Virus record (IMG/VR): IMGVR_UViG_3300032236_002285
Location: 186,001 to 250,000 of that record
Strand: one strand, 5' to 3'
Length of the DNA: 64,000 bases
Below the pieces are notes generated by a model. The model was not told the origin of the DNA and did not search any database. It saw only the letters and a list, made by a program, of their open reading frames with translations. The position numbers and the translations under genes were made by a program. This document shows, piece after piece, positions 26,915 to 52,034 of the stretch; within the stretch, counting starts at the first letter, position 1, and every line of letters begins with the position of its first letter.

Positions 26915-27787
26915 ATGTTAAACAATAAAGAAAAATCAATAAAATATTTATTGGAGAATTACTCAGTTAAATCAAAGGTTGAAATACAAAATGATTTAAA
27001 TTTATCTTGGTCTTATATACAAAAATTAGCATGTCTTAATGGTATTAAAAGAACATCAAATGAGTCACCAAATGATTGGAGATATAAAAAGTTAATAAAC
27101 TATAATGATAATATCTCTATGTATTGGATAGGATTTATGATAGCAGACGGTCATATTTCTAAAAAGAAGAATATACAGATTAATATATCTATAAAAGATA
27201 AACTACATCTGTTAAAAATAACAGAACATATTGGTAATATTTCTATAAATCTAACTGATAGTCAAATAAGAGCTACTATAAACGATAGAAGAACTACGAG
27301 TGTTTTATCAAATGATTTTAAATGGCTTTCTAATAAGACAAAAAATCCAATAGAAATACCAAAAATTATTTCTGAGGATTCTTTATTTAGTTTAATTATT
27401 GGATTTATAGATGGTGATGGTACCATAAATAAAAAAGGACATATTTTTGTTAAGTGTGATGGTTCTTGGAAGAATAATTTGGAATATTTTTATTATATAT
27501 TAACAGGTGAAAAAAAAGTATTTAATCTAACAAGTGATGGTTTATCCATAATCTATATTCTTAAATTTAAGAATTTAATTCAAATTAAAGAAAGAGCTAA
27601 ATTATTAAATTTACCAATAATGAGTAGAAAGTGGGATAGAATAGAAAATAAAGTTTTCAAGAGTGATAAATATGAGATTGTTAAAACTCTACTTAAAGAA
27701 GGTAATTCTATTAAAGAGACAATTGATAAAACAAACTTTGGACAAACTCTTGTTTATAAAGTTTATAAAGAAATTAATAAAATTTAA
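26915..27787 (+). mobile_element. free-standing LAGLIDADG homing endonuclease
   Basis: YWIGFMIADGHI and IIGFIDGDGTI motifs plus HTH-like ends. Confidence 0.85.
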
Positions 27788-32457: not shown

Positions 32458-32565
32458 ATGAGAACAAATAATACACATAAACATTTTAGTAAATCGAATA
32501 AGTGGTTTAGCAACCAGTTCGGTACTGAAAGTGTATTGCTCTCAAATAAGATGTTAAAAGTCTAA
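32458..32565 (+). CDS. attenuator leader peptide 1 (His/Phe/Trp)
   Basis: MRTNNTHKHFSKSNKWFSNQFGTESVLLSNKMLKV; between promoter 32370-32401 and terminator. Confidence 0.75.
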   Translation: MRTNNTHKHFSKSNKWFSNQFGTESVLLSNKMLKV

Positions 32566-32584
32566 TTTTAGATAAACAATATTC

Positions 32585-32620
32585 AAAAGTCCGAACTTCA
32601 AAAAAGTTCGGACTTTTTTG
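32585..32620 (+). terminator. attenuator terminator 1
   Basis: AAAAGTCCGAACTT / AAGTTCGGACTTTT followed by T run. Confidence 0.9.
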
Positions 32621-32628
32621 TTTTATAT

Positions 32629-32714
32629 GGTGTCGTTATTGTTAACGGAGAGTCGAAAGACGAGCATCTGGCTCTGTGAAAGCCAGGGTACGGGTTCAAA
32701 TCCCGTACGACACC
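32629..32714 (+). tRNA. tRNA-His(GUG) with G-1:C73 and a hairpin insertion in the D-loop
   Basis: Loop CT-GTG-AA; 8-bp acceptor; GTC-GAAA-GAC in D-loop. Confidence 0.75.
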
Positions 32715-32720
32715 CAAGAA

Positions 32721-32796
32721 GGAACCTAAGCTAATCAGGTGAAAGCACTGGACTGAAAATCCAGGGAGCCCGGATCGTTACCGGGAGGTTCCACCA
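32721..32796 (+). tRNA. tRNA-Phe(GAA)
   Basis: CTGGA-CTGAAAA-TCCAG; CCA encoded; atypical T-loop ATCGTTA. Confidence 0.85.
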
Positions 32797-32804
32797 AAAT
32801 AAAT

Positions 32805-32878
32805 GGTGTATGTAGCTCAATCGGTAGAGCGTCGGTTTGTGGAGCCGAAGGTAGCGGGATCGTAACCCGTCATTCACC
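32805..32878 (+). tRNA. tRNA-His(GUG)
   Basis: TCGGT-TTGTGGA-GCCGA; G-1 and C73. Confidence 0.85.
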
Positions 32879-32883
32879 CAAAA

Positions 32884-32955
32884 GGAGACTTAGCTGAGAC
32901 GGTTTAGCGTTTGGTTGAAGCCCAAAAGAGGTCGGTTCGATTCCGGCAGTCTCCA
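32884..32955 (+). tRNA. tRNA-Phe(GAA)
   Basis: TTTGG-TTGAAGC-CCAAA. Confidence 0.8.
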
Positions 32956-32961
32956 CAACAT

Positions 32962-33032
32962 ACGTCATACAGACAAGGTGTCGGTCAGGTCTCCAAAACC
33001 TCGACGGTGGGGTTCGATTCCTCAATGGCGTG
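32962..33032 (+). tRNA. tRNA-Trp(CCA)
   Basis: AGGT-CTCCAAA-ACCT; G73. Confidence 0.8.
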
Positions 33033-33038
33033 CTAAAT

Positions 33039-33110
33039 ACGGGTATGGTGTAATGGCTAACATTTTGGTCTCCAAAACCAAAGATCTTGATTCGAATTCA
33101 GGTACCCGTG
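33039..33110 (+). tRNA. tRNA-Trp(CCA)
   Basis: TTGGT-CTCCAAA-ACCAA; G73. Confidence 0.85.
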
Positions 33111-33174
33111 CTAAAAGGTTCGTGTCTTTTTTTGATGTTTCGGACTTAATATATAGAATAAATAAGTTTTATAT

Positions 33175-33717
33175 ATGAAAGAGGAAATATTAAAGTTAAG
33201 AAGTGAAGGTAAGACTTTTAATGAAATAAAAGAAATACTAAAATGTTCAAAATCTACAATATCTTACCATTGTAGTGATGAACAAAAAGAAAAATCTAGA
33301 AATAGAACTAGAAAAAGAAGAGAGAATTTAATTCACTCTAAACTTGAAAGTTTTATCTATAGAAAAGAAAAAAATGTAAAAGAAGGAATAAGAAAGTTTC
33401 AAAAAACTGACTCAAATTCTAAAGGAAGGGTTAATAGTAATATTAAAACAACATTTAATTGGGTTGATGTTTTGAATAAGTTTGGTGAAAATACATATTG
33501 TTATTTGTCTGGAGAGAAAATTAACCTATATGAAGATAACTACAACTTTGACCATATTATACCAGTTAGTAAAAATGGTAGTAATAGTTTAGAAAACTTA
33601 GGAATTCTACACGAAAAAGTAAATAGAATGAAATCTGACTTATCACCAGAAGAATTAATAGAATGGTGTAAAAAGATTTTAGAGTTTAATAATTATAAAA
33701 TAGAAAAATTAGATTAA
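33175..33717 (+). mobile_element. HTH-HNH endonuclease inserted in tRNA array
   Basis: DHIIPVSKNGSNSLENLGILHEKVNRMKSD. Confidence 0.85.
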
Positions 33718-33791
33718 GAGTATGAAAACTAAATTGAAATATAAACGCTAGGCAACGATTCGAGTCACGGATCGTTGCCCTCAACAACAAT

Positions 33792-33864
33792 GATTCCGTA
33801 GCTCAATTGGTGGAGCTTCCGGCTTTTAACCGGAAGGATGTGAGTTCGAACCTCACCGGAATCA
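33792..33864 (+). tRNA. tRNA-Lys(UUU)
   Basis: TCCGG-CTTTTAA-CCGGA. Confidence 0.9.
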
Positions 33865-33871
33865 CTAAAAT

Positions 33872-33958
33872 GGTTCTGTCGCTTAGCGGCTATAGCAACT
33901 GGCTTTTAACCAGTAGAGATAATGTTCTCAACCGTGGGTTCGAGTCCCACCAGGACCA
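33872..33958 (+). tRNA. tRNA-Lys(UUU) with long variable arm
   Basis: ACTGG-CTTTTAA-CCAGT then GAGA-taatgt-TCTC arm. Confidence 0.8.
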
Positions 33959-33966
33959 CTAAAAAC

Positions 33967-34050
33967 ACTCCTGTCGCTCAGAGGTCGAGAGCAACTGGCT
34001 TTTAACCAGTAGACGCAAGTCCATCGTAGGTTCGAATCCTACCAGGAGTA
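33967..34050 (+). tRNA. tRNA-Lys(UUU) with long variable arm
   Basis: ACTGG-CTTTTAA-CCAGT then GAC-GCAA-GTC arm. Confidence 0.8.
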
Positions 34051-34054
34051 CTAA

Positions 34055-34137
34055 CGATTCGTCGCATAGTGGCTATTGCACCTGACTCTTAATCAGGCGA
34101 AGAAATTCAATCGTGGGTTCGAGTCCCACCGGGTCGA
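34055..34137 (+). tRNA. tRNA-Lys(CUU) with long variable arm
   Basis: CCTGA-CTCTTAA-TCAGG then GAA-gaaa-TTC arm. Confidence 0.8.
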
Positions 34138-34145
34138 CAAAAAAT

Positions 34146-34251
34146 AGTCAAGTGGCGAAAAGGCGAGACGCATAAGAGTTAATCTTTTGGGGTAGACCGA
34201 AGAACCGCGAAAAAGAAGGTTCCCATACAGGTTCGAGTCCTGTCTTGACTA
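34146..34251 (+). tRNA. atypical tRNA-Leu(UAA)-like gene with very long variable region
   Basis: AGTCAAG/CTTGACT acceptor, A73, Leu-like D arm, weak anticodon arm GT-TAA-TC, ~35 nt variable region. Confidence 0.55.
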
Positions 34252-34260
34252 CAAAAATAT

Positions 34261-34404
34261 GGAGAGAGTAGCTCAGTTGGTTAGAGCACGTATTCATTCT
34301 CTGACAAGGATTCTCTGATTATGGTCAACATAATTAGTAGTGATGTTAAGAGATACTTCGGTCTGTTAAACCCGTGGTCGTAGGTTCGAGTCCTACCTCT
34401 CTCC
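34261..34404 (+). tRNA. tRNA-Asn(GUU) interrupted by ~69 nt structured insert
   Basis: Removing 34291-34359 restores CGGGT-CTGTTAA-ACCCG; extra G-1:C73 pair. Confidence 0.7.
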
Positions 34405-34432
34405 CAAATATTAGATTATTAAAAAAATAAAA

Positions 34433-35065
34433 ATGGAAATAAAATTAGAAAGTACTTACAAAGGAACAAGGATTCTTTTTAAGGACAGCGCTAAAAATAA
34501 AAGAAAGTTACTAAATAGCATGATTGATATTTTAGAATCATATGGTTATCAGGAAATAATGATACCTATTATTCAAAAACAAGAAACATTTCAGTCAAAA
34601 GTTGGTGATGAAAACAGAAATATGATGTTTAACTTCAAAGACAGAGGTGATAGAGATTTGTGTTTATCTCCAGAGTACACGGCAATTGTTCAACAATTAT
34701 CAAGTGATAAAATGAAATATGATAAAGATGTAAAAATGTTTTATATCGGTGAATGTTTCAGAGGAGAAAATACACAATCTGGAAGATGGAGACAATTTAC
34801 ACAATTTGGAGTTGAAGTTATAAATCCAAGTAAAGATTATACTGATGAAATGGTTGAAATTGCCAGTAAACTAATTGAGTTAGTTACAAAAAATTATGAA
34901 GTAAATCTGGAAACTACAAGAGGACTTGACTACTACAAAGGTGGAAAAGGATTTGAAATTGCTTGTCCCGAATTAGGATCATCTAAGCAAATTTGTGGAG
35001 GTGGTTCATATGATGGTGGTATTGGATTTGCTGTTGGTGTAGATAGATTACTATTATGTAAATAA
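34433..35065 (+). CDS. minimal histidyl-tRNA synthetase-like catalytic core (no anticodon-binding domain)
   Basis: Motif 1 GYQEIMIPII, LSPEYTA, motif 2 FRGENTQSGRWRQFTQFGVE, GLDYY, motif 3 GGGSYD-GGIGFAVGVDRL; only 210 aa. Confidence 0.8.
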   Translation: MEIKLESTYKGTRILFKDSAKNKRKLLNSMIDILESYGYQEIMIPIIQKQETFQSKVGDENRNMMFNFKDRGDRDLCLSPEYTAIVQQLSSDKMKYDKDVKMFYIGECFRGENTQSGRWRQFTQFGVEVINPSKDYTDEMVEIASKLIELVTKNYEVNLETTRGLDYYKGGKGFEIACPELGSSKQICGGGSYDGGIGFAVGVDRLLLCK

Positions 35066-35074
35066 AAATAAATT

Positions 35075-35202
35075 GGGGATGTAGCTCAGTGGTAGAGAAA
35101 ACTATCTCTTTTGAAAATTTACCTCATAAGAGTGTTGATTGAGAGAGTTACTTCGTATATTTTGAAATTATAAGGTCGTGGGTTCGAATCCCACCATCCC
35201 CA
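35075..35202 (+). tRNA. tRNA (anticodon probably UGA) interrupted by ~55-60 nt structured insert
   Basis: GGGGATG/CATCCCC acceptor, canonical D and T arms, insert ending TTACTTCG; anticodon assignment uncertain. Confidence 0.6.
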
Positions 35203-35281
35203 CAAAAAAGATTTGGTAAATCAATAAAAAAGATTTACTTTTGTAAAAACAAAGAAAAGAAAATTAATATATAATAAAGTT

Positions 35282-35359
35282 ATGAAAACAATTATGCTTA
35301 CATCGAAGTCGTCAAGTAGTCGCTCGTCAAAACCGAGTGAGGTTCGATCGTATTCATAA
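35282..35359 (+). CDS. attenuator leader peptide 2 (Ser/Arg)
   Basis: MKTIMLTSKSSSSRSSKPSEVRSYS; 10 Ser and 2 Arg in 25 aa; promoter 35212-35243. Confidence 0.85.
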   Translation: MKTIMLTSKSSSSRSSKPSEVRSYS

Positions 35360-35382
35360 TATTCGTATAAAGATATTTTATG

Positions 35383-35415
35383 AAACCCTCGAACTTAATG
35401 TTTGAGGGTTTTTTT
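35383..35415 (+). terminator. attenuator terminator 2
   Basis: AAACCCTCGAAC-ttaat-GTTTGAGGGTTT followed by T run. Confidence 0.9.
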
Positions 35416-35426
35416 GTTTTATATAT

Positions 35427-35501
35427 GGTTCTATAGTTTAAATGGATAAAACACTCGGCTACGAACCGAGAGACGTGAAGGTTCGAATCCTTCTGGAACT
35501 A
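35427..35501 (+). tRNA. tRNA-Arg(ACG)
   Basis: CTCGG-CTACGAA-CCGAG. Confidence 0.9.
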
Positions 35502-35507
35502 CAAATT

Positions 35508-35598
35508 GGAGAAGTCAACCGAAATTGGTATCGGCCTAGTCTTGAAAACTAGTCATCGGCGATGAGTTGGTGTGTCGGTTCGAGTCCGACCTTCTCCG
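35508..35598 (+). tRNA. tRNA-Ser(UGA)
   Basis: CTAGT-CTTGAAA-ACTAG, long V arm, G73. Confidence 0.9.
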
Positions 35599-35603
35599 CA
35601 ACC

Positions 35604-35689
35604 GGAAGGAGTCCGAATGGACGAGGAACTTGTCTTGAAAACAAGCGGCTGTAAAAGGTTTGGGGGTTCGATTCCCTCTTCTTCCGCCA
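35604..35689 (+). tRNA. tRNA-Ser(UGA)
   Basis: CTTGT-CTTGAAA-ACAAG, G73, CCA. Confidence 0.9.
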
Positions 35690-35691
35690 AT

Positions 35692-35777
35692 GGAGAGTAA
35701 AGTAGCCAGGGTGCTACCACCGCCTGCTAAGCGAGTGGCCCATTAATTTGGGTGTGATTCGAGTTCACTGCTCTCCG
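35692..35777 (+). tRNA. tRNA-Ser(GCU)
   Basis: CGC-CTGCTAA-GCG, long V arm, G73. Confidence 0.85.
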
Positions 35778-35789
35778 CAAAAGATAACT

Positions 35790-35876
35790 GGAGAGTTGTC
35801 CGAGTGGTTTATGGAGCACGCTTGGAAAGCGTGTGTACTCGAAAGGGTACCGAAGGTTCGAATCCTTCACTCTCCG
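35790..35876 (+). tRNA. tRNA-Ser(GGA)
   Basis: CACGC-TTGGAAA-GCGTG, long V arm, G73. Confidence 0.9.
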
Positions 35877-35891
35877 CAAAAAAATTATATT

Positions 35892-36194
35892 ATGGATACA
35901 AGATATTTGACAAGACCAACATCATTTGAAACTACATTAGCTATTCTACAAGAATTGCTAAGTGAAAGATTATCACCGGAATGGAGGAGAATTTGGGTGC
36001 AAGGGTCTAATTCTGGTAGAACAAGATTCTGCTTTACTATATTTCCCAATACTGGAACATATACGATGAGATTTCATGATGTTGGTTCGTTTAGACAATT
36101 TAGAACCGATGGTGAATTAGAATCTGAATTTGAGCTATTAAATAGATTTATTACTTCTTTATCTGAAGGTGTATTAAAAGACATAATTATCTGA
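35892..36194 (+). CDS. hypothetical protein
   Basis: Start reassigned to ATG 35892; the upstream extension in the ORF track overlaps tRNAs. Confidence 0.55.
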   Translation: MDTRYLTRPTSFETTLAILQELLSERLSPEWRRIWVQGSNSGRTRFCFTIFPNTGTYTMRFHDVGSFRQFRTDGELESEFELLNRFITSLSEGVLKDIII

Positions 36195-36292
36195 AATTAA
36201 GAAAGGCTTTACTAATATATAGATTTATGAAAATTTTATCTATTTTAGTAAAGCCTTTAATTATGTATGTTAATTGGAGAATTAAATCTAGG

Positions 36293-45625: not shown

Positions 45626-45711
45626 GCTACGGTATGCAAACCGGAATAAGCGACCAGACTTTCAATCTGGACATCGAAAGATGTGTGCGGGTTCGAGCCC
45701 CGTCCGTAGTA
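45626..45711 (+). tRNA. tRNA-Glu(UUC) with long variable arm
   Basis: CCAGA-CTTTCAA-TCTGG then ACATC-GAAA-GATGT. Confidence 0.8.
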
Positions 45712-45718
45712 CAAATAA

Positions 45719-47379: not shown

Positions 47380-47459
47380 GCGGGTGTCGTATAGTGGCAC
47401 GTAGTAGATTATGCCGGTCTTCCAAACCGGAGATGTGAGTTCGATTCTCATCACCCGCT
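47380..47459 (+). tRNA. tRNA-Gly(UCC) with enlarged D-loop
   Basis: CCGGT-CTTCCAA-ACCGG; U73. Confidence 0.85.
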
Positions 47460-47461
47460 CA

Positions 47462-47605
47462 AAGATAGTAGTAATGTACGAGTGTTACTTCGTATTTCCA
47501 ACGACTAGTTCAGGTTCGAATCCTGGGTTCCGCTCAAATGATAATATGCGGGATTAGTGTAACGGTAGCACAGTAAAAACACACTCAGCAAATTTTCTCT
47601 ATCTT
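47462..47605 (+). tRNA. circularly permuted tRNA (Gly-type acceptor) flanked by the split insert module
   Basis: 3' half (anticodon, T arm, GTTCCGC-T) at 47491-47534 precedes 5' half (GCGGGAT plus D arm) at 47548-47574; flanks pair AAGATAG/CTATCTT and GAGTGT/ACACTC. Confidence 0.7.
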
Positions 47606-47835: not shown

Positions 47836-50799
47836 ATGAAAAAGATCCTAAAGTTCTTACTAGTGTCATTGACTCTAGTATTTTTTGTGCCTAAACAAGC
47901 ACAAGCCTCTCATTGCGCTGGAGCTGAATTATTATTCCAATGGCTTCATGACTCAACTTATCAACTTTATTACAAGTTTTACCGTGATTGTGCCGGTATT
48001 AATGAGCCAACAAATGTTACAGTTTGTTGTAGTAACAATTGTAATTCAACTACAATCAACGTAATTTTAAACAAAGTTACTACACTTATTCCTCCTGGTG
48101 TAAATAATGGAAATGAAGTTGCTAGAGTTTGTCCTGGTATACATACCACTTGTGGTAATCCAGCCGGAACAACACCTGGCTACAGAGAATGGTGGTATGC
48201 TAATACTGTAACTCTACCATCAAGATGTAACCACTGGACTTTTTCAGTAAGTCAGTCAGCTAGAAACTCTGGTATTACTAATTTATCTAATCCAGGTTCT
48301 CAAAATCTTTATACAGAAGCCACACTTGATAATAGAGATGCTCAAGGTGATACCTCACCTTTCTTTTCTGTTAAGCCGGTCCCGTATATCTGTGCTAATA
48401 TACCATACACTTATAACAATGGAGCTTATGACTTAAATAACGACTCTATGGTGTTTAAAATTGTTCAACCAAATGGTGGCTCAGGTTGTCCTCCAACCAC
48501 GTCAGCCATTGCTTTTGCTAATACAACACCAAGTTTAAATCTAACTGATAATCCTTTACAAACAAACAATACTTTTTCTATAAATGCTCAAAATGGATTG
48601 ATGAGTTTTACTCCAGCTGGAACACAAATTGCAGTTGTAACTATTCAAGTAGATGAATATAGAAATGGTAGAAAAATTGGTTCTGTAATGCGTGATATTC
48701 AAATTATTGTTTTGTCTTGTAATGTTCAGCAACCAGAAGTAAATATATCTGCTGCTTCTTTAAATAATGCAACTCTTGATAATAATGGAAACATTACAGC
48801 TTGTGCTGGAACACCTTTTAGTTTTTGTTTTGATGCTACAACACCAGATTCAAATGGTATTTTACTCGCATCTGATAACTCAAATATTGTAATGCCTAAT
48901 TCAGTAGTATCATATACTAATCAAACTACAGATACGGTTACTGGTTGTTTTTCTTGGTGGCCTTCTGTGTATGATACAGGTTATAAAATTTTTACAATAA
49001 CTATAATGGATTCATCTTGTCGTCCTCCTGGCTTAATGTTTTCACAAACATTTACCTTACCAATTTATGTTTGGCCTGCGACTAATATTCTAAGTGATAC
49101 CACAATCTGTAGAGGTGGTGCTGCAAATTTACTTGCTGTTGGTGGTGGAAATTTTATTTGGTCGGTTTTACCAGGAGGTTCTGCTTTATCAACTTTAAAC
49201 TGCACAAACTGCTCAAATCCAGTTGCTACTCCAATAATCACAACTCAGTATGTAGCTACATCTCAAATAACAAATGCTATTTGTAAAAATAAAGATACGG
49301 TAACAGTAGCGGTTATTCAACCATTTCAGATTATACTACCTGATACAACAACATGTGTTAATAATTCTTTACAATTAAATGCAGTAGTTAATACAACAAA
49401 TAATTATACTATATCCTGGACACCAAATACTTATTTAAGTAATGCTGGTATTAATAATCCAATTGTAACACCACCATCTGGTCAATCATTGATAACTTAC
49501 TATGTTAAAGTTTCTTCAATTGGTTCATCAGCTTGTTCAGTTACAGATACATTCAAATTAAAAGTTTTACAAGGATTTACTATCTATAATCATGATACAA
49601 CAATTTGTCTTGGTAAATCAGTAAATATAGCCGGCTCTGGTGATGCTTTATATAATTATACTTGGACACCAACCAGTGGTATAAGTACAATACTTACACC
49701 ATCAATAACACCAAATGTAGTTACAACAACAACGTATATTTTAACAGGTAAATATCCTGGTTGTAAAGATTCTACTAATAAAATTAAAATCACAACAGAA
49801 CCTGTACCAACTGTAGTAGCTGGTGCTGATAGACAAATATGTAGTGGTGATACTATTCATCTTACACCTTTAGTTACTCCAAGTTATCCATATGTTTACA
49901 CTTGGACACCAGGATCTTCATTAGATAATCCAAATTCTGAATTTGCTATCTTTTCAGGATTAATCACAACTCATTTATCACTAACTGTTAAATCACCAGT
50001 TGCTAATTGTTCATCAGCTGATAGTTTAATTATTAATGTAGTTAAACAATCTTTCTTAAAGGTTTCACCACAAGACACTTCAATTTGTCCATCTGATACA
50101 GTTATGATTAAATTAACCACACCTAATGATAAGTTAGTTATTTTTAATTGGAGCCCTCATAATTTTATCAGTGATTATAATTCAGTTAATCCTTATTTAT
50201 ACCCACCAACATCAATGGTTTATACTGCTTGGGCTACTGATACAGCTGGTTGTAATGATACTATATCAGCTTATATTGAAATTAGACCAGGTGCTGTAAT
50301 TGACATGCCTACATCAATTGGTTTATATCCTGGTGATTCTTATCAAATAACACCTCAAACTAACTGTACTAAATTTATTTGGTTTCCATCAAGTGGTTTA
50401 AATTATGACTCATTATCAAATCCAACAGTGACCAACTTAGGAGTTAATACTAAGTATATAGTTATTGGTCAAACAGAATGGGGATGTAAAGTATCTGATT
50501 CAATAAATGTAATGGTTATTAATGATTCTTATATTGATATACCTAATGCTTTTTCACCTACAGGTGATCACAATAAAACACTAAAAGTAATTCATTTAGG
50601 TTCTGCTACTCTTGAATATTTTAGAATATACAATAGATGGGGTAATAAAGTTTTTGAAACAAATGATATTAATGTTGGATGGGATGGTACTTATAATGGT
50701 CAAGCTCAATCACAAGGTGTTTATGTTTATGAAGTAAAAGCAATAACATATAAAGGTAGGGTCTTTATTAAACAAGGCAATATAACTTTGATGAAATAA
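47836..50799 (+). CDS. secreted adhesin-like protein with T9SS type-B (gliding motility-associated) C-terminal domain
   Basis: Signal peptide, ASHCAGAE start, Ig/PKD-like repeats, IPNAFSP...FRIYNRWGNKVFE...WDGTYNG...GVYVY...GNITLMK. Confidence 0.9.
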   Translation: MKKILKFLLVSLTLVFFVPKQAQASHCAGAELLFQWLHDSTYQLYYKFYRDCAGINEPTNVTVCCSNNCNSTTINVILNKVTTLIPPGVNNGNEVARVCPGIHTTCGNPAGTTPGYREWWYANTVTLPSRCNHWTFSVSQSARNSGITNLSNPGSQNLYTEATLDNRDAQGDTSPFFSVKPVPYICANIPYTYNNGAYDLNNDSMVFKIVQPNGGSGCPPTTSAIAFANTTPSLNLTDNPLQTNNTFSINAQNGLMSFTPAGTQIAVVTIQVDEYRNGRKIGSVMRDIQIIVLSCNVQQPEVNISAASLNNATLDNNGNITACAGTPFSFCFDATTPDSNGILLASDNSNIVMPNSVVSYTNQTTDTVTGCFSWWPSVYDTGYKIFTITIMDSSCRPPGLMFSQTFTLPIYVWPATNILSDTTICRGGAANLLAVGGGNFIWSVLPGGSALSTLNCTNCSNPVATPIITTQYVATSQITNAICKNKDTVTVAVIQPFQIILPDTTTCVNNSLQLNAVVNTTNNYTISWTPNTYLSNAGINNPIVTPPSGQSLITYYVKVSSIGSSACSVTDTFKLKVLQGFTIYNHDTTICLGKSVNIAGSGDALYNYTWTPTSGISTILTPSITPNVVTTTTYILTGKYPGCKDSTNKIKITTEPVPTVVAGADRQICSGDTIHLTPLVTPSYPYVYTWTPGSSLDNPNSEFAIFSGLITTHLSLTVKSPVANCSSADSLIINVVKQSFLKVSPQDTSICPSDTVMIKLTTPNDKLVIFNWSPHNFISDYNSVNPYLYPPTSMVYTAWATDTAGCNDTISAYIEIRPGAVIDMPTSIGLYPGDSYQITPQTNCTKFIWFPSSGLNYDSLSNPTVTNLGVNTKYIVIGQTEWGCKVSDSINVMVINDSYIDIPNAFSPTGDHNKTLKVIHLGSATLEYFRIYNRWGNKVFETNDINVGWDGTYNGQAQSQGVYVYEVKAITYKGRVFIKQGNITLMK

Positions 50800-51215: not shown

Positions 51216-52034
51216 ATGAAAAACAAAGACTTCGGTGATCGTATGAAAATGTACGAAAACCAAACCTGCGGAATCAGATTGATTCCCAGAATTCCGGTAA
51301 TTGCTCGCCTTGATGGAAAAGGCTTTTCCAAATTCACTAAAGGTCTTAAAAGACCGTATGATGAAAGATTATCACGTTTGATGGCTGAAACAACTAAGTA
51401 TTTAGTTAAAGAAACTAATGCTAATTGTGGATATACTCAATCAGATGAAATTACTTTAATGTGGTACACTGATAAGATTGATGCTTCAATTTACTTTGAT
51501 GGTCGTCTTTTCAAAATGTTATCTGATCTTTCAGCAATGGCTTCTGTATTTTTTAACAGAAAACTTAGTGAATATCTTCCAGAAAAGTCTGACAAGATGC
51601 CAAGGTTTGACTGTAGAGTTTACAATGTACCTACTTTAGATGAGGCTATGAATTCATTCCTTTGGAGAGAACAAGATGCTACTAAGAACTCAATTACTAT
51701 GGCGGCTTCTGCTTATTACTCTCACAAAGAGTTAATGAATAAGAATGGATCTGAAAAACAAGAAATGCTTTTTCAAAAAGGTGTTAATTGGAATGATTAT
51801 CCAACTTTTTTCAAAAGAGGTTCTTATGTACAAAGAAAAAGAGTTTTAACTCCTTTCACTGCTGAAGAAATTGAAAGATTACCAGCTAAACACAATGCTA
51901 GAAAAGACCCTAGTATGTTAATTGAAAGATGGGTTATTGATGTAGTTGAACTACCTAAATTATCAAGTATTGAAAACTCAGTTGAAGTTATTGTATTTGG
52001 TGAAGAACCTAAACTAAAAAGTCCAGTTATTTAA
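51216..52034 (+). CDS. thg1: tRNA(His) guanylyltransferase Thg1 / Thg1-like 3'-5' polymerase
   Basis: RLDGKGFSKFT, YTQSDEITL, FDCRV, WREQDATKNSI. Confidence 0.9.
   Translation: MKNKDFGDRMKMYENQTCGIRLIPRIPVIARLDGKGFSKFTKGLKRPYDERLSRLMAETTKYLVKETNANCGYTQSDEITLMWYTDKIDASIYFDGRLFKMLSDLSAMASVFFNRKLSEYLPEKSDKMPRFDCRVYNVPTLDEAMNSFLWREQDATKNSITMAASAYYSHKELMNKNGSEKQEMLFQKGVNWNDYPTFFKRGSYVQRKRVLTPFTAEEIERLPAKHNARKDPSMLIERWVIDVVELPKLSSIENSVEVIVFGEEPKLKSPVI

What the first reader, a model, noticed from the sequence alone, without database searches (positions are those of the whole stretch)
34291..35155. Conserved ~60-70 nt structured insert (ending TACTTCG) inside tRNA genes
The Asn gene (insert 34291-34359) and the gene at 35075 (insert ~35098-35155) carry related inserts between the D arm and the anticodon loop. 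Each has a proximal helix (TCTCT/AGAGA), an asymmetric internal loop, a distal hairpin and a terminal TACTTCG. The same module appears split around the permuted tRNA at 47462-47605 (TAGTAGTGATGT..AGAGATACTTCG versus TAGTAGTAATGT..GAGTGTTACTTCG). It is far too short for a group I or II intron, and I cannot match it to a canonical bulge-helix-bulge or to the ribozyme cores I know. It could be a new mini-intron or ribozyme class, or a retained extra domain. Excision boundaries that best restore the stems differ by 1-2 nt between copies.
Basis: partly seen in the sequence, partly recalled or inferred. Interest (0 to 1): 0.85.

Follow-up and report, generated by a model that had tools for sequence, protein, structure and literature searches.

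The report
Y-RNA stem module inside phage tRNAs
The 56-69-nt insert in two tRNA genes of this huge phage is real and conserved, but it is most likely not an intron or ribozyme: it looks like the docking stem of a phage family of Ro60-associated Y RNAs, fused here to tRNA-shaped RNAs in several topologies.

Summary
Window 34291-34359 and 35099-35154 are related two-helix modules inside otherwise complete tRNA genes. The same module, split into a 5' and a 3' strand, flanks a permuted tRNA at 47462-47605. Two covariance models built here found about 120 further copies in phage contigs, with strong covariation. Consensus, 5' strand: P2-AG-U(bulge)-RG-UNA-P1-UACUUC. Consensus, 3' strand: A-rich linker-P1'-UU-CY-CU-P2'. 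No Rfam family, known ribozyme or bulge-helix-bulge motif matches.

Genomic context changes the reading. A Ro60/Rsr (TROVE+vWA) gene lies beside the module in 30 of 56 module-bearing loci. In 100 loci chosen only for that protein, 51 carry the module, and all 62 hits are on the gene's strand. The window's own phage contig encodes the protein, with two module-stemmed RNAs directly upstream. That position and architecture are those of bacterial and phage Y RNAs such as YrlA, an Rsr-binding stem plus a permuted tRNA mimic.

Best reading (0.6): the module is a retained Rsr-docking domain. The permuted copy is a YrlA-like Y RNA, and the two "interrupted" genes are single-chain tRNA/Y-RNA chimeras. 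Excision as an intron or processing signal is not excluded (about 0.2). Binding and RNA fate are untested. I rate it a new variant of a known kind.

The parts
34262..34290 (+). Gene 1, 5' tRNA part: acceptor 5' strand GAGAGAG, U8 A9, D arm, A26, C27 G28
   Evidence: Sequence reading. ARAGORN and Rfam tRNA do not call the interrupted gene. Rfam gives a partial tRNA hit on 34336-34398 (24.5 bits).
34291..34359 (+). Gene 1 module, hairpin form (69 nt). Linker 34291-97; P1 3' strand 34298-302; loop 34303-10 with UU 34311-12; CU 34313-14; P2 34315-23 pairing with 34329-37 (loop 34324-28); bulged U 34338; AG 34339-40 pairing with the CU; UGA 34341-43; P1 5' strand 34349-53; invariant UACUUC 34354-59
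   Evidence: Structural parse (as L040, the same contig: P1 5 bp, P2 9 bp). MFE fold shows both helices. R2 hit 34304-34360, E=0.68.
34360..34404 (+). Gene 1, 3' tRNA part: G29 G30 U31, anticodon loop CUGUUAA (GUU, Asn), stem ACCCG, variable loop, T arm, acceptor CTCTCTC, discriminator C
   Evidence: The same junction (28|29) and the same anticodon loop occur in the permuted Asn-like copy L038 4862-5008 directly upstream of an rsr gene. Acceptor, anticodon and T stems there carry compensatory changes.
35075..35098 (+). Gene 2, 5' tRNA part: acceptor GGGGAUG, U8 A9, D arm
   Evidence: Rfam gives only a tmRNA-type sub-threshold hit spanning 35075-35205, because tRNA-like ends flank an insert.
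35099..35154 (+). Gene 2 module, hairpin form (56 nt). Linker 35099-105; P1 35106-12 pairing with 35141-47; AC 35121-22 pairing with GU 35134-35; P2 35123-25 pairing with 35130-32 (loop AUAA); bulged U 35133; UGA 35136-38; UACUUC 35149-54
   Evidence: R2 hit 35096-35155, 29.4 bits, E=0.0014. The GU/AC pair replaces the usual RG/CY (double compensatory change). A relative's contig has G35141A and G35143A, turning G.U into A-U in this P1 register.
35155..35202 (+). Gene 2, 3' tRNA part: anticodon arm (stem UAUAU/UUAUA with one U.U, loop UUUGAAA), variable loop, T arm, acceptor CAUCCCC, discriminator A
   Evidence: sequence reading. The anticodon assignment (UGA) is uncertain.
47462..47491 (+). 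Terminal-stem copy, 5' strand: P2 47462-66, AG 47467-68, bulged U 47469, AG 47470-71, UAA 47472-74, P1 47480-85, UACUUC 47486-91
   Evidence: R1 hit 47462-47605, 23.9 bits, E=0.019. Parse gives P1 6 bp and P2 7 bp. Homologues: L017, L140, L208.
47492..47573 (+). Circularly permuted tRNA-like domain. Order: anticodon-arm-like hairpin, variable loop, T arm, acceptor 3' strand 47527-33, 14-nt linker 47534-47, acceptor 5' strand 47548-54, D arm. The order matches YrlA-type Y RNAs, with an extra anticodon-like hairpin
   Evidence: The architecture is compared with YrlA as described in PMC4201824. Rfam YrlA gives no hit here even at E<=10.
47574..47605 (+). Terminal-stem copy, 3' strand: A-rich linker UAAAAAC 47574-80, P1 47581-86, loop, UU 47595-96, CU 47597-98, CU 47599-600, P2 47601-05

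Best explanation
The insert is a modular RNA domain: the Ro60/Rsr-docking stem of a phage family of Y RNAs.

Anatomy. It has two helices, P1 and P2. P2 is extended by two base pairs beyond a bulged U. An internal loop carries conserved UNA on one strand and UU on the other. An invariant single-stranded UACUUC on the 5' strand, opposite an A-rich linker, joins the stem to whatever is attached.

Forms. In its common form the two strands are the 5' and 3' ends of a small RNA encoded just upstream of the phage's Ro60/Rsr gene. The middle of that RNA is a bare anticodon-like hairpin, an acceptor-less tRNA body, a circularly permuted tRNA or a whole tRNA. Window 47462-47605 is such an RNA: YrlA-like, with a 7-bp acceptor stem closed by a linker that RNase P could open, as in M. 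smegmatis YrlA. In genes 1 and 2 the same module is closed by a hairpin loop and grafted between the D arm and the anticodon stem of an otherwise complete tRNA.

Inferred mechanism. These transcripts are end-processed like tRNAs and keep the module. They therefore tether the phage Rsr ring to a tRNA-shaped handle. Through Rsr they may also recruit host exoribonucleases such as PNPase. The likely purpose is tRNA surveillance or repair, or countering host tRNA-targeting defences.

Shown: the anatomy, the covariation, the family, its linkage to rsr, and the absence of known intron or ribozyme features. Inferred: Rsr binding, retention of the module in the mature RNA, and the downstream function.
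For: 1) Linkage to the protein. ORF clustering over 56 module-bearing loci gives one family in 30 of them (members listed). It is TROVE plus Ro60-type vWA.

2) Reciprocal test. In 100 loci fetched only by that protein, R1 finds 62 modules at E<=0.01 in 51 loci. All 62 are on the protein's strand.

3) Same genome. The window's contig IMGVR_UViG_3300032236_002285 (matched to the window, locus L040) encodes the protein. It is L423:2501-3949, 82% identical to the LR745206 homologue. Pfam gives TROVE at 65.5 bits plus vWA_Ro60. The best solved relatives are Thermus phage phiLo Ro60 9KOP/9L5Y (E 1e-22), then human and Xenopus Ro60 and D. radiodurans Rsr. A module lies at L423 2046-2114 (E 7e-6), and a second module-stemmed RNA follows it. 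Both are upstream on the same strand. The relative LR745206 has the same layout.

4) Tandem arrays of module-stemmed RNAs abut rsr. L038 4724-5245 holds four. Among them are a whole tRNA-Gln and a permuted Asn(GUU) copy with the same 28|29 junction as window gene 1.

5) Architecture matches published Y RNAs. Those have a 5'/3' stem with a bulged helix, conservation mainly on the 5' strand, and a permuted tRNA-like domain. [quoted passage not shown] Phage phiLo has two Y-like RNAs upstream of its Ro60 (PMC12135203).

6) The module occurs with inserts that cannot become tRNAs. These are 10-36-nt hairpins. It also replaces the D arm in a recurrent tRNA-like family. An intron has no purpose in those settings.

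7) Covariation supports every helix, including the two pairs after the bulge (AU 59, GC 6, none unpaired).

8) Specificity control. 606 kb of bacterial DNA pre-selected to contain the 5'-strand pattern gave one R1 hit, in a Saprospiraceae MAG.
Against: - The published Ro-binding motifs (GNCGAAN0-1G in YrlA, GGUCCGA in animals) are not present. The conserved letters here are different.
- Rfam YrlA does not reach threshold on any copy. It scores at most 39 bits against a gathering score of 69 on L075, and gives nothing on 47462-47605.
- None of the three window copies lies next to rsr. No TROVE ORF was found among the window ORFs of 90 aa or more (about 30 of these ORFs were also scanned against Pfam).
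- Binding could not be modelled, because the complex tool does not fold protein-RNA pairs.
- The tRNA parts look fully functional. Exact removal of 34291-34359 would give a perfect tRNA-Asn, and no other tRNA-Asn is seen in the 64 kb. That is what an intron would look like.
- In about seven copies UACUUC ends exactly at or within one nucleotide of position 1 of a complete tRNA, which suggests a processing site.
Confidence: 0.6

Rival explanations
1. The module is an intervening sequence or processing signal removed at the RNA level. It would be cut on both sides of the attached helix, by a protein endonuclease or with help from Rsr and its nucleases, and the ends then ligated. Genes 1 and 2 would yield normal tRNAs. 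Permuted copies would pass through a circular intermediate opened by RNase P and 3' processing. This would be functionally analogous to archaeal bulge-helix-bulge splicing of intron-containing, split and permuted tRNAs.
For: - Exact excision of 34291-34359 restores a 5-bp anticodon stem.
- The same 28|29 junction, with compensatory changes in the acceptor, anticodon and T stems, is kept in an unrelated phage.
- The tRNA parts carry canonical 7-nt anticodon loops with many different anticodons.
- Permuted tRNAs with breakpoints in the anticodon stem, variable arm and before the T arm all end at the module.
- No other tRNA-Asn was found in the window.
- This reading is compatible with Rsr association, because Rsr assists rRNA maturation in D. 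radiodurans (PMC4201824).
Against: - Only the UACUUC side is conserved. The other junction is a 5-10-nt A-rich linker without a fixed site.
- 0-3 surplus nt lie between UACUUC and the tRNA nucleotide needed, for example GAA, GUA or GAU in the L162, L335 and L130 copies.
- ARAGORN on joined ends accepts many different trimmings, so no unique junction emerges.
- There is no bulge-helix-bulge geometry (sequence reading).
- No ligase or splicing endonuclease is enriched beside the module. The next most common neighbours are GIY-YIG/NUMOD3 and HNH proteins.
- Many copies hold only a hairpin, or a body with no acceptor stem.
- No skipped form was seen in four runs, and a metatranscriptome contig keeps the gene 2 insert. 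This is weak, because these are contigs and may include DNA.
Confidence: 0.2
2. The module is a new small self-cleaving ribozyme that cuts after UACUUC. This would release the downstream RNA with a defined 5' end, independently of RNase P.
For: - UACUUC is invariant in 64 of 66 copies, and the next nucleotide is G in 57.
- In about seven copies ARAGORN places position 1 of a complete tRNA at or within one nucleotide of the end of UACUUC.
- The size and the roughly 20 conserved nucleotides around two helices are typical of small ribozymes.
- No known family matches, so it would be a new class.
Against: - No structural relation to hammerhead, hairpin, twister, twister-sister, pistol, hatchet or HDV/theta models. 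Rfam gives no hit even at E up to 1-5.
- The helices are stacked in series, without a junction or a supported pseudoknot. The candidate AGUAG/UUACU pairing is contradicted by the covariation that pairs AG with CU.
- The start of the attached helix shifts between U, C and G of UUCG.
- The tight linkage to a protein gene known to bind exactly this kind of stem explains the conservation without catalysis.
Confidence: 0.07
3. The module is a selfish repeat that has inserted into or recombined with tRNA genes, leaving disrupted or rearranged pseudogenes with no function of their own.
For: - Many copies per genome sit inside tRNA arrays rich in HNH, GIY-YIG and LAGLIDADG endonuclease genes.
- The attached tRNA parts are varied and sometimes truncated.
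Against: - Both helices differ in nearly every copy yet stay paired, so copies are not recent duplicates.
- The tRNA parts keep cloverleaf pairing through compensatory changes between distant phages.
- Orientation relative to rsr is fixed: 62 of 62.
- No target-site duplications or terminal repeats were seen.
Confidence: 0.08

Closest known systems
YrlA-type bacterial and phage Y RNAs (Salmonella, M. smegmatis, mycobacteriophages; Chen et al. 2014, PMC4201824; Rfam RF02553)
   Same: - Small RNAs encoded directly 5' of a Ro60/Rsr (TROVE) gene on the same strand, often two or more in tandem.
- The 5' and 3' ends pair into a stem with a bulged helix, and conservation lies mainly on the 5' strand.
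- The middle is a circularly permuted tRNA mimic (V, T, acceptor-like hairpin, D).
[quoted passage not shown]
   Different: - The conserved letters differ: AG-U-RG-UNA and UACUUC here, against GNCGAAN0-1G.
- The Rfam model does not detect these copies.
- The attached domain here is often a genuine-looking tRNA with an anticodon arm, a whole tRNA, or only an anticodon stem-loop.
- Copies are scattered in tRNA arrays away from rsr.
- The module also exists as a closed hairpin inside unpermuted tRNAs (window genes 1 and 2) or in place of the D arm.
Thermus phage phiLo Ro60 with Yrl1 and Yrl2 (PMC12135203; PDB 9KOP, 9L5Y)
   Same: - It is the closest solved relative of the window phage's TROVE protein (E 1e-22).
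- Two Y-like RNAs lie upstream of the gene.
- A stem-bulge-stem is bound by the protein, and host PNPase is recruited.
   Different: - Yrl1 and Yrl2 were recognised by a CGAA motif.
- They are not described as fused to tRNAs.
Archaeal and algal intron-containing, split and permuted tRNA genes processed through bulge-helix-bulge motifs
   Same: - The same three gene topologies occur: interrupted, permuted, and ends held by flanking complementary strands.
- Insertion sites in the tRNA body vary.
   Different: - There is no pair of 3-nt bulges separated by 4 bp.
- No splicing endonuclease is known in bacteria or seen here.
- Only one junction is conserved.
- The module is linked to a Ro60 gene.
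Theta (HDV-like) ribozymes next to phage tRNAs (PMC10879173)
   Same: Small conserved RNA elements abutting tRNAs in phage tRNA arrays, with a proposed role in tRNA end formation.
   Different: Theta ribozymes have the HDV double-pseudoknot fold and cleave at their own 5' end, downstream of the tRNA. There is no sequence or structural match here.

Membership tests
Y RNA (Ro60/Rsr-associated ncRNA) | Encoded beside a Ro60/TROVE gene, usually upstream on the same strand | tested here: met
   Met for the family. TROVE lies beside the module in 30 of 56 module loci. The module is in 51 of 100 TROVE loci, and all 62 hits are on the gene's strand. The window's own contig has the gene with two module-stemmed RNAs upstream. 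The three window copies themselves lie in tRNA arrays with no TROVE ORF in the 64 kb.
Y RNA (Ro60/Rsr-associated ncRNA) | Long stem formed by the 5' and 3' ends, containing a bulged helix, plus a large internal domain | tested here: met
   47462-47605 and 66 relatives have P2 with a bulged U plus 2 bp, an internal loop and P1, then the insert. Covariation score is 0.566 against 0.156 in shuffles. In genes 1 and 2 the stem is closed by a loop instead of being terminal.
Y RNA (Ro60/Rsr-associated ncRNA) | Conserved Ro-binding sequence on the 5' strand (GGUCCGA in animals and Deinococcus; GNCGAAN0-1G in YrlA) | tested here: not met
   The conserved 5'-strand letters are AG-U-RG-UNA and UACUUC(G). 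The nucleotides after UUCG are not conserved as AA.
Y RNA (Ro60/Rsr-associated ncRNA) | Physical binding by Ro60/Rsr | not testable with these tools
This result is not evidence either way.
YrlA (Rfam RF02553) | Match to the curated covariance model at gathering score (69 bits) | tested here: not met
   Only sub-threshold hits on tRNA-like parts: 20-25 bits in the window, at most 39.3 bits on L075, and none at 47462-47605 with E<=10.
YrlA (Rfam RF02553) | Permuted tRNA-like domain in the order V, T arm, acceptor-like hairpin, D arm | tested here: met
   47492-47573 runs variable loop, T arm, acceptor 3' strand, 14-nt linker, acceptor 5' strand, D arm. It has an additional anticodon-like hairpin that published YrlA lacks (PMC4201824).
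Group I / group II introns | Conserved catalytic core (P3-P9 for group I, domains I-VI for group II), more than 200 nt | tested here: not met
   The inserts are 56-69 nt with two helices. No Rfam intron model hit.
Bulge-helix-bulge tRNA introns / permuted tRNA genes | Two 3-nt bulges on opposite strands separated by a 4-bp helix at the exon-intron junctions | tested here: not met
   By sequence reading, the junction strands are a 6-nt UACUUC and a 5-10-nt A-rich linker that do not pair. No 4-bp helix forms between the intron 5' end and the 3' exon start.
Small self-cleaving ribozymes (hammerhead, hairpin, twister, twister-sister, pistol, hatchet, HDV/theta) | Match to the family's core sequence and structure | tested here: not met
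   No hit at E<=5 in 32500-36200. No hit at E<=1 in five module-rich loci, including free-standing copies.
Small self-cleaving ribozymes (any, including new) | Site-specific self-cleavage in vitro | not testable with these tools
   Needs transcripts and Mg2+ incubation.

The most novel reading that the evidence does not exclude
The module is an RNA-level excision and ligation signal, self-catalysed or carried out by Rsr-recruited or unknown enzymes. It would turn interrupted, permuted and end-clamped tRNA genes of phages into working tRNAs. That would be the first tRNA splicing system of this kind in bacterial viruses, functionally parallel to archaeal bulge-helix-bulge processing but unrelated to it.
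Probability: 0.12. Interest if true: 0.9.

Novelty: new variant of a known kind. Interest (0 to 1): 0.6.

Why it matters
Y RNAs that mimic tRNA are known, but only as one sequence family found next to rsr. If this reading is right, four things follow.

- Phages carry a second, sequence-distinct and much more modular family that current models miss (no Rfam hit).
- Its docking stem is fused to whole tRNAs, permuted tRNAs, acceptor-less bodies and bare anticodon stem-loops with many different anticodons. That points to a direct functional link between Ro60/Rsr and tRNA handling during infection, such as repair, quality control, or decoys against anticodon nucleases.
- tRNA-gene finders silently miss or mis-call these genes in phage genomes, and "interrupted" or "permuted" phage tRNAs should not be taken as evidence of splicing.
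- The invariant UACUUC and the bulged helix give a defined, testable RNA-protein interface.

If the minority reading (excision) is true instead, it would be a new RNA processing pathway.

Tried and rejected
- Pseudoknot between AGUAG and UUACU. It is complementary on paper. It was rejected because AG pairs with the CU of UUCUCU and covaries with it (AGUGGU with UUCCCU, GU with AC in gene 2).
- Mapping onto hammerhead, hairpin, pistol, twister and hatchet architectures from memory. Nothing fitted, and Rfam agrees.
- Bulge-helix-bulge at the junctions. None was found.
- RNA evidence. The two run searches found only DNA runs, and RNA-library runs holding 4-7% of the words. Laying X1, X18, X21 and X22 gave mostly chimeric 'joints' from conserved tRNA parts of other organisms and no 34290|34360 or equivalent junction. 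One metatranscriptome contig carries gene 2 with its insert. This is inconclusive, because these are contigs and may include DNA.
- Complex prediction of the phage Rsr with 34288-34362. The first job was lost. The second was not folded, because protein-RNA pairs are unsupported.
- ARAGORN on inserts joined end to end with all trimmings. 26 elements give calls, but for many trimmings each, so no unique splice junction can be inferred.
- Discriminator base as a test of Asn identity. It varies even among the phage's ordinary tRNA-Asn genes.
- Scan of cellular genomes with the 5'-strand pattern. It returned almost only chance matches, with 1 of 80 loci confirmed by R1. This was useful only as a specificity control.
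- My first relaxed structural regex for the hairpin form produced many false positives. It was replaced by model R2.
Full report
**What the window is**

The window comes from a huge phage. It is identical over the gene 1 region to the 476-kb IMG/VR contig IMGVR_UViG_3300032236_002285 (locus L040). It is about 80% identical over the tRNA region to the 634-kb and 642-kb uncultured phages LR745206 and LR756502. ARAGORN finds 22 tRNA genes in three arrays. Rfam adds two more, and above threshold it finds nothing except tRNA.

**The observation**

Gene 1 (34262-34404) has a normal acceptor stem, D arm, T arm and an Asn anticodon loop. It is interrupted between positions 28 and 29 by 34291-34359. 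Gene 2 (35075-35202) is interrupted after the D arm by 35099-35154. At 47462-47605 the 3' part of a tRNA comes first and the 5' part second. The halves are joined by a 14-nt linker across the acceptor ends, and the outer flanks carry the two halves of the same module.

A single fold is not exceptional (z about -1.6 for the whole genes). TACTTCG alone is at chance level. The case therefore rests on comparison with relatives.

**A large family**

Pattern scans of IMG/VR were followed by a structural parse. Two covariance models were then built: R1 for the form whose strands are the RNA's two ends, and R2 for the closed hairpin form.

- R1 gave 66 matches in 56 loci. It gave 62 more in loci fetched for other reasons.
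- R2 gave 75 matches, including window genes 2 and 1.

The consensus reads as follows.
- 5' strand: P2, AG, a bulged nucleotide (mostly U), RG, U/C-N-A, 0-9 nt, P1, then UACUUC.
- 3' strand: an A-rich linker (50% A against 30% elsewhere), P1', 1-12 nt, UU, CY, CU, P2'.

P1 and P2 differ in almost every copy and remain paired. The pair after the bulge is A-U in 59 copies and G-C in 6, and never unpaired. The next pair is G-C in 65 of 66. The AG/CU pairs switch to AA/UU, GG/CC or CA/UG. Gene 2 has GU/AC where others have RG/CY. A relative of gene 2 changes two G.U pairs of P1 to A-U.

Whole-structure statistics exceed all 500 shuffles and all slid controls for both models. One caveat applies: the alignments were fitted to the models. 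UACUUC is invariant in 64 of 66 copies, and the following base is G in 57.

**What it is not**

- Rfam has no family over the module at relaxed thresholds, either in the window or in free-standing copies.
- It is far too small for a group I or II intron.
- The junction strands (UACUUC and the A-rich linker) cannot form a bulge-helix-bulge.
- The helices are stacked in series, not around a junction.
- The one attractive pseudoknot (AGUAG with UUACU) is contradicted by the covariation that pairs AG with CU.

**The context that changes the reading**

I called ORFs in the 56 module-bearing loci and clustered them. One protein family appears in 30 loci (members). It is a TROVE-domain protein with a Ro60-type vWA domain, that is, a Ro60/Rsr orthologue. 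The module typically lies 100-500 nt upstream on the same strand (for example L015, L038, L080, L155, L219, L264).

The reciprocal test used 100 loci fetched only by homology to the protein. It gives 62 R1 hits at E<=0.01 in 51 loci, and every one is on the gene's strand.

As a specificity control, 606 kb of bacterial DNA pre-selected for the 5'-strand pattern gave a single hit, in a Saprospiraceae MAG.

The window's own contig encodes the protein elsewhere (L423:2501-3949).
- It is 82% identical to the LR745206 homologue.
- Pfam gives TROVE plus vWA_Ro60.
- The best solved relatives are phage phiLo Ro60, then human and Xenopus Ro60 and Deinococcus Rsr.
- A module-stemmed small RNA lies at L423 2046-2114 (E 7e-6), and a longer one follows it. 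Both are upstream on the same strand. LR745206 has the same arrangement.

**Comparison with the literature**

Chen et al. 2014 (PMC4201824) showed several things about bacterial and phage Y RNAs.
- They are encoded beside rsr on the same strand.
- Their ends pair into an Rsr-binding stem that is recognised mainly through its 5' strand.
- YrlA carries a tRNA mimic in permuted order (V, T, acceptor-like hairpin, D).
- M. smegmatis YrlA, which has a 7-bp acceptor stem, is cut by RNase P and receives CCA.

Phage phiLo Ro60 binds two upstream Y-like RNAs and recruits host PNPase (PMC12135203). Jumbo-phage TROVE proteins have been linked to tRNA repair (PMC7824862).

Window 47462-47605 has exactly the YrlA layout, including a 7-bp acceptor stem closed by a linker. 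It also has an anticodon-like hairpin that YrlA lacks.

The family differs from published YrlA in three ways.
- The GNCGAA motif is absent.
- The Rfam model fails to detect it.
- The range of attached domains is much wider.

**Variety of attached domains**

- About 15 copies hold only a 10-36-nt hairpin, and many of these are clean anticodon stem-loops.
- Others hold D-anticodon-T bodies without an acceptor stem. There UUCG of the invariant motif pairs with a CGA(A) after the T arm, and ARAGORN reads UACUUCG as the acceptor strand in seven.
- About seven hold complete tRNAs whose called first nucleotide lies at or within one nucleotide of the end of UACUUC (for example L308, L149, L054, L154).
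- About twenty hold permuted tRNAs, broken in the anticodon stem, in a class-II variable arm, or before the T arm.

Hairpin-form copies like window genes 1 and 2 occur in other phages too (L151, L167). A recurrent family has the module in place of the D arm (L038 906, L054 322, L075 4221, L133, L175, L181, L214, L222 and others).

Directly upstream of the rsr gene of L038 there are four module-stemmed RNAs in tandem. One is a permuted Asn(GUU) copy with the same 28|29 junction and anticodon loop as window gene 1. It has fully compensatory acceptor, anticodon and T stems. Gene 1 is therefore the unpermuted, single-chain version of an RNA that elsewhere sits in a Y-RNA array.

**Interpretation**

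The best-supported explanation is that the module is the Rsr-docking stem of a phage Y-RNA family. On this view it is a retained domain in genes 1 and 2. These RNAs present Rsr, and any nuclease it recruits, with a tRNA-shaped partner. Shown and inferred steps are separated in the explanation section.

I put this at 0.6 because four things are missing or point the other way.
- Binding is untested.
- The canonical Ro-binding motif is missing.
- The tRNA parts are so well preserved that excision would give perfect tRNAs.
- UACUUC often ends exactly at tRNA position 1.

Excision or processing (0.2) remains possible and could coexist with Rsr binding. A new ribozyme (0.07) and a selfish repeat (0.08) are less likely. 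The remainder is left for explanations not considered here.

**RNA data**

Only assembled contigs of metagenomic and metatranscriptomic runs were available. They confirm the inserts in DNA of this phage and of relatives. They show that the truncated HisRS-like ORF between genes 1 and 2 is absent from one relative. They include one RNA-library contig with the gene 2 insert retained. They show no credible spliced junction. This is weak evidence against splicing and nothing more.

**Verdict**

The best reading is a new, modular variant of tRNA-mimicking Y RNAs rather than a new intron or ribozyme class.

Noticed in passing
window 33872-33959, 33967-34051, 34055-34138, 45626-45712: tRNA-Lys (UUU, CUU) and tRNA-Glu (UUC) genes of 84-88 nt with 10-15-nt stem-forming variable arms. 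Lys and Glu tRNAs are normally class I. Similar long-arm Lys tRNAs occur in LR745206.
   Followed up: no
window 34148-34258: tRNA-like sequence with acceptor AGUCAAG/CUUGACU, a T arm and a variable region of about 40 nt. Neither ARAGORN nor Rfam tRNA calls it. A sub-threshold YrlA hit overlaps its 3' end (34226-34287).
   Followed up: no
window 47380-47459: 80-nt tRNA-Gly(UCC)-like gene with an enlarged D region containing GUAGUAG. The extra sequence sits at the same place where the module sits in genes 1 and 2, so it may be a remnant.
   Followed up: no
window 51216-52034: Thg1-like 3'-5' nucleotidyltransferase ORF (Pfam Thg1 102 bits plus Thg1C). This is a tRNA 5'-end repair enzyme, notable beside tRNA-like RNAs that lack a 5' acceptor strand in related phages.
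   Followed up: no
window 34433-35065: 210-aa ORF with only the N-terminal catalytic-core part of histidyl-tRNA synthetase, lying between the two chimeric tRNA genes. A relative's contig joins gene 1 and gene 2 directly without it (X21 record 17).
   Followed up: partly
window 33175-33717, 26915-27787, 47836-50799: An HNH endonuclease ORF sits inside the tRNA array, and there is a LAGLIDADG-like ORF. A 987-aa protein ends in a CHU_C type IX secretion sorting domain, which hints at a Bacteroidota host. The only cellular R1 hit was in a Saprospiraceae MAG (L472 515-599).
   Followed up: partly
L038 906-964, L054 322-379, L075 4221-4278, L133 2195-2250, L175 13400-13456, L181 3069-3126, L214 1068-1126, L222 2088-2145, L351 2655-2710, L348 7097-7150: Recurrent single-copy tRNA-like RNA. 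Its order is a 7-nt acceptor strand (often GGGGAAG), the module hairpin in place of the D arm (often UACAUCG instead of UACUUCG), an anticodon-like hairpin, the T arm, then CUUCCCC and sometimes an encoded ACCA.
   Followed up: partly
L167 2601-2681, L176 4452-4522, L123 1132-1218, L308 1609-1695, L171 9885-9962: Module-stemmed RNAs whose only cargo is an anticodon stem-loop with a canonical 7-nt loop (for example CUGCAAA, CUUUUAA, UUUGGAC, AUUCUAA). They could be decoys for anticodon-directed enzymes.
   Followed up: no
L074 7577-7637; L109 6209-6284: Sub-threshold Rfam 'freshwater-1' hit (50.7 against 72 bits) in a module-rich tRNA array. A CUA-anticodon suppressor tRNA sits in another module-bearing phage.
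   Followed up: no
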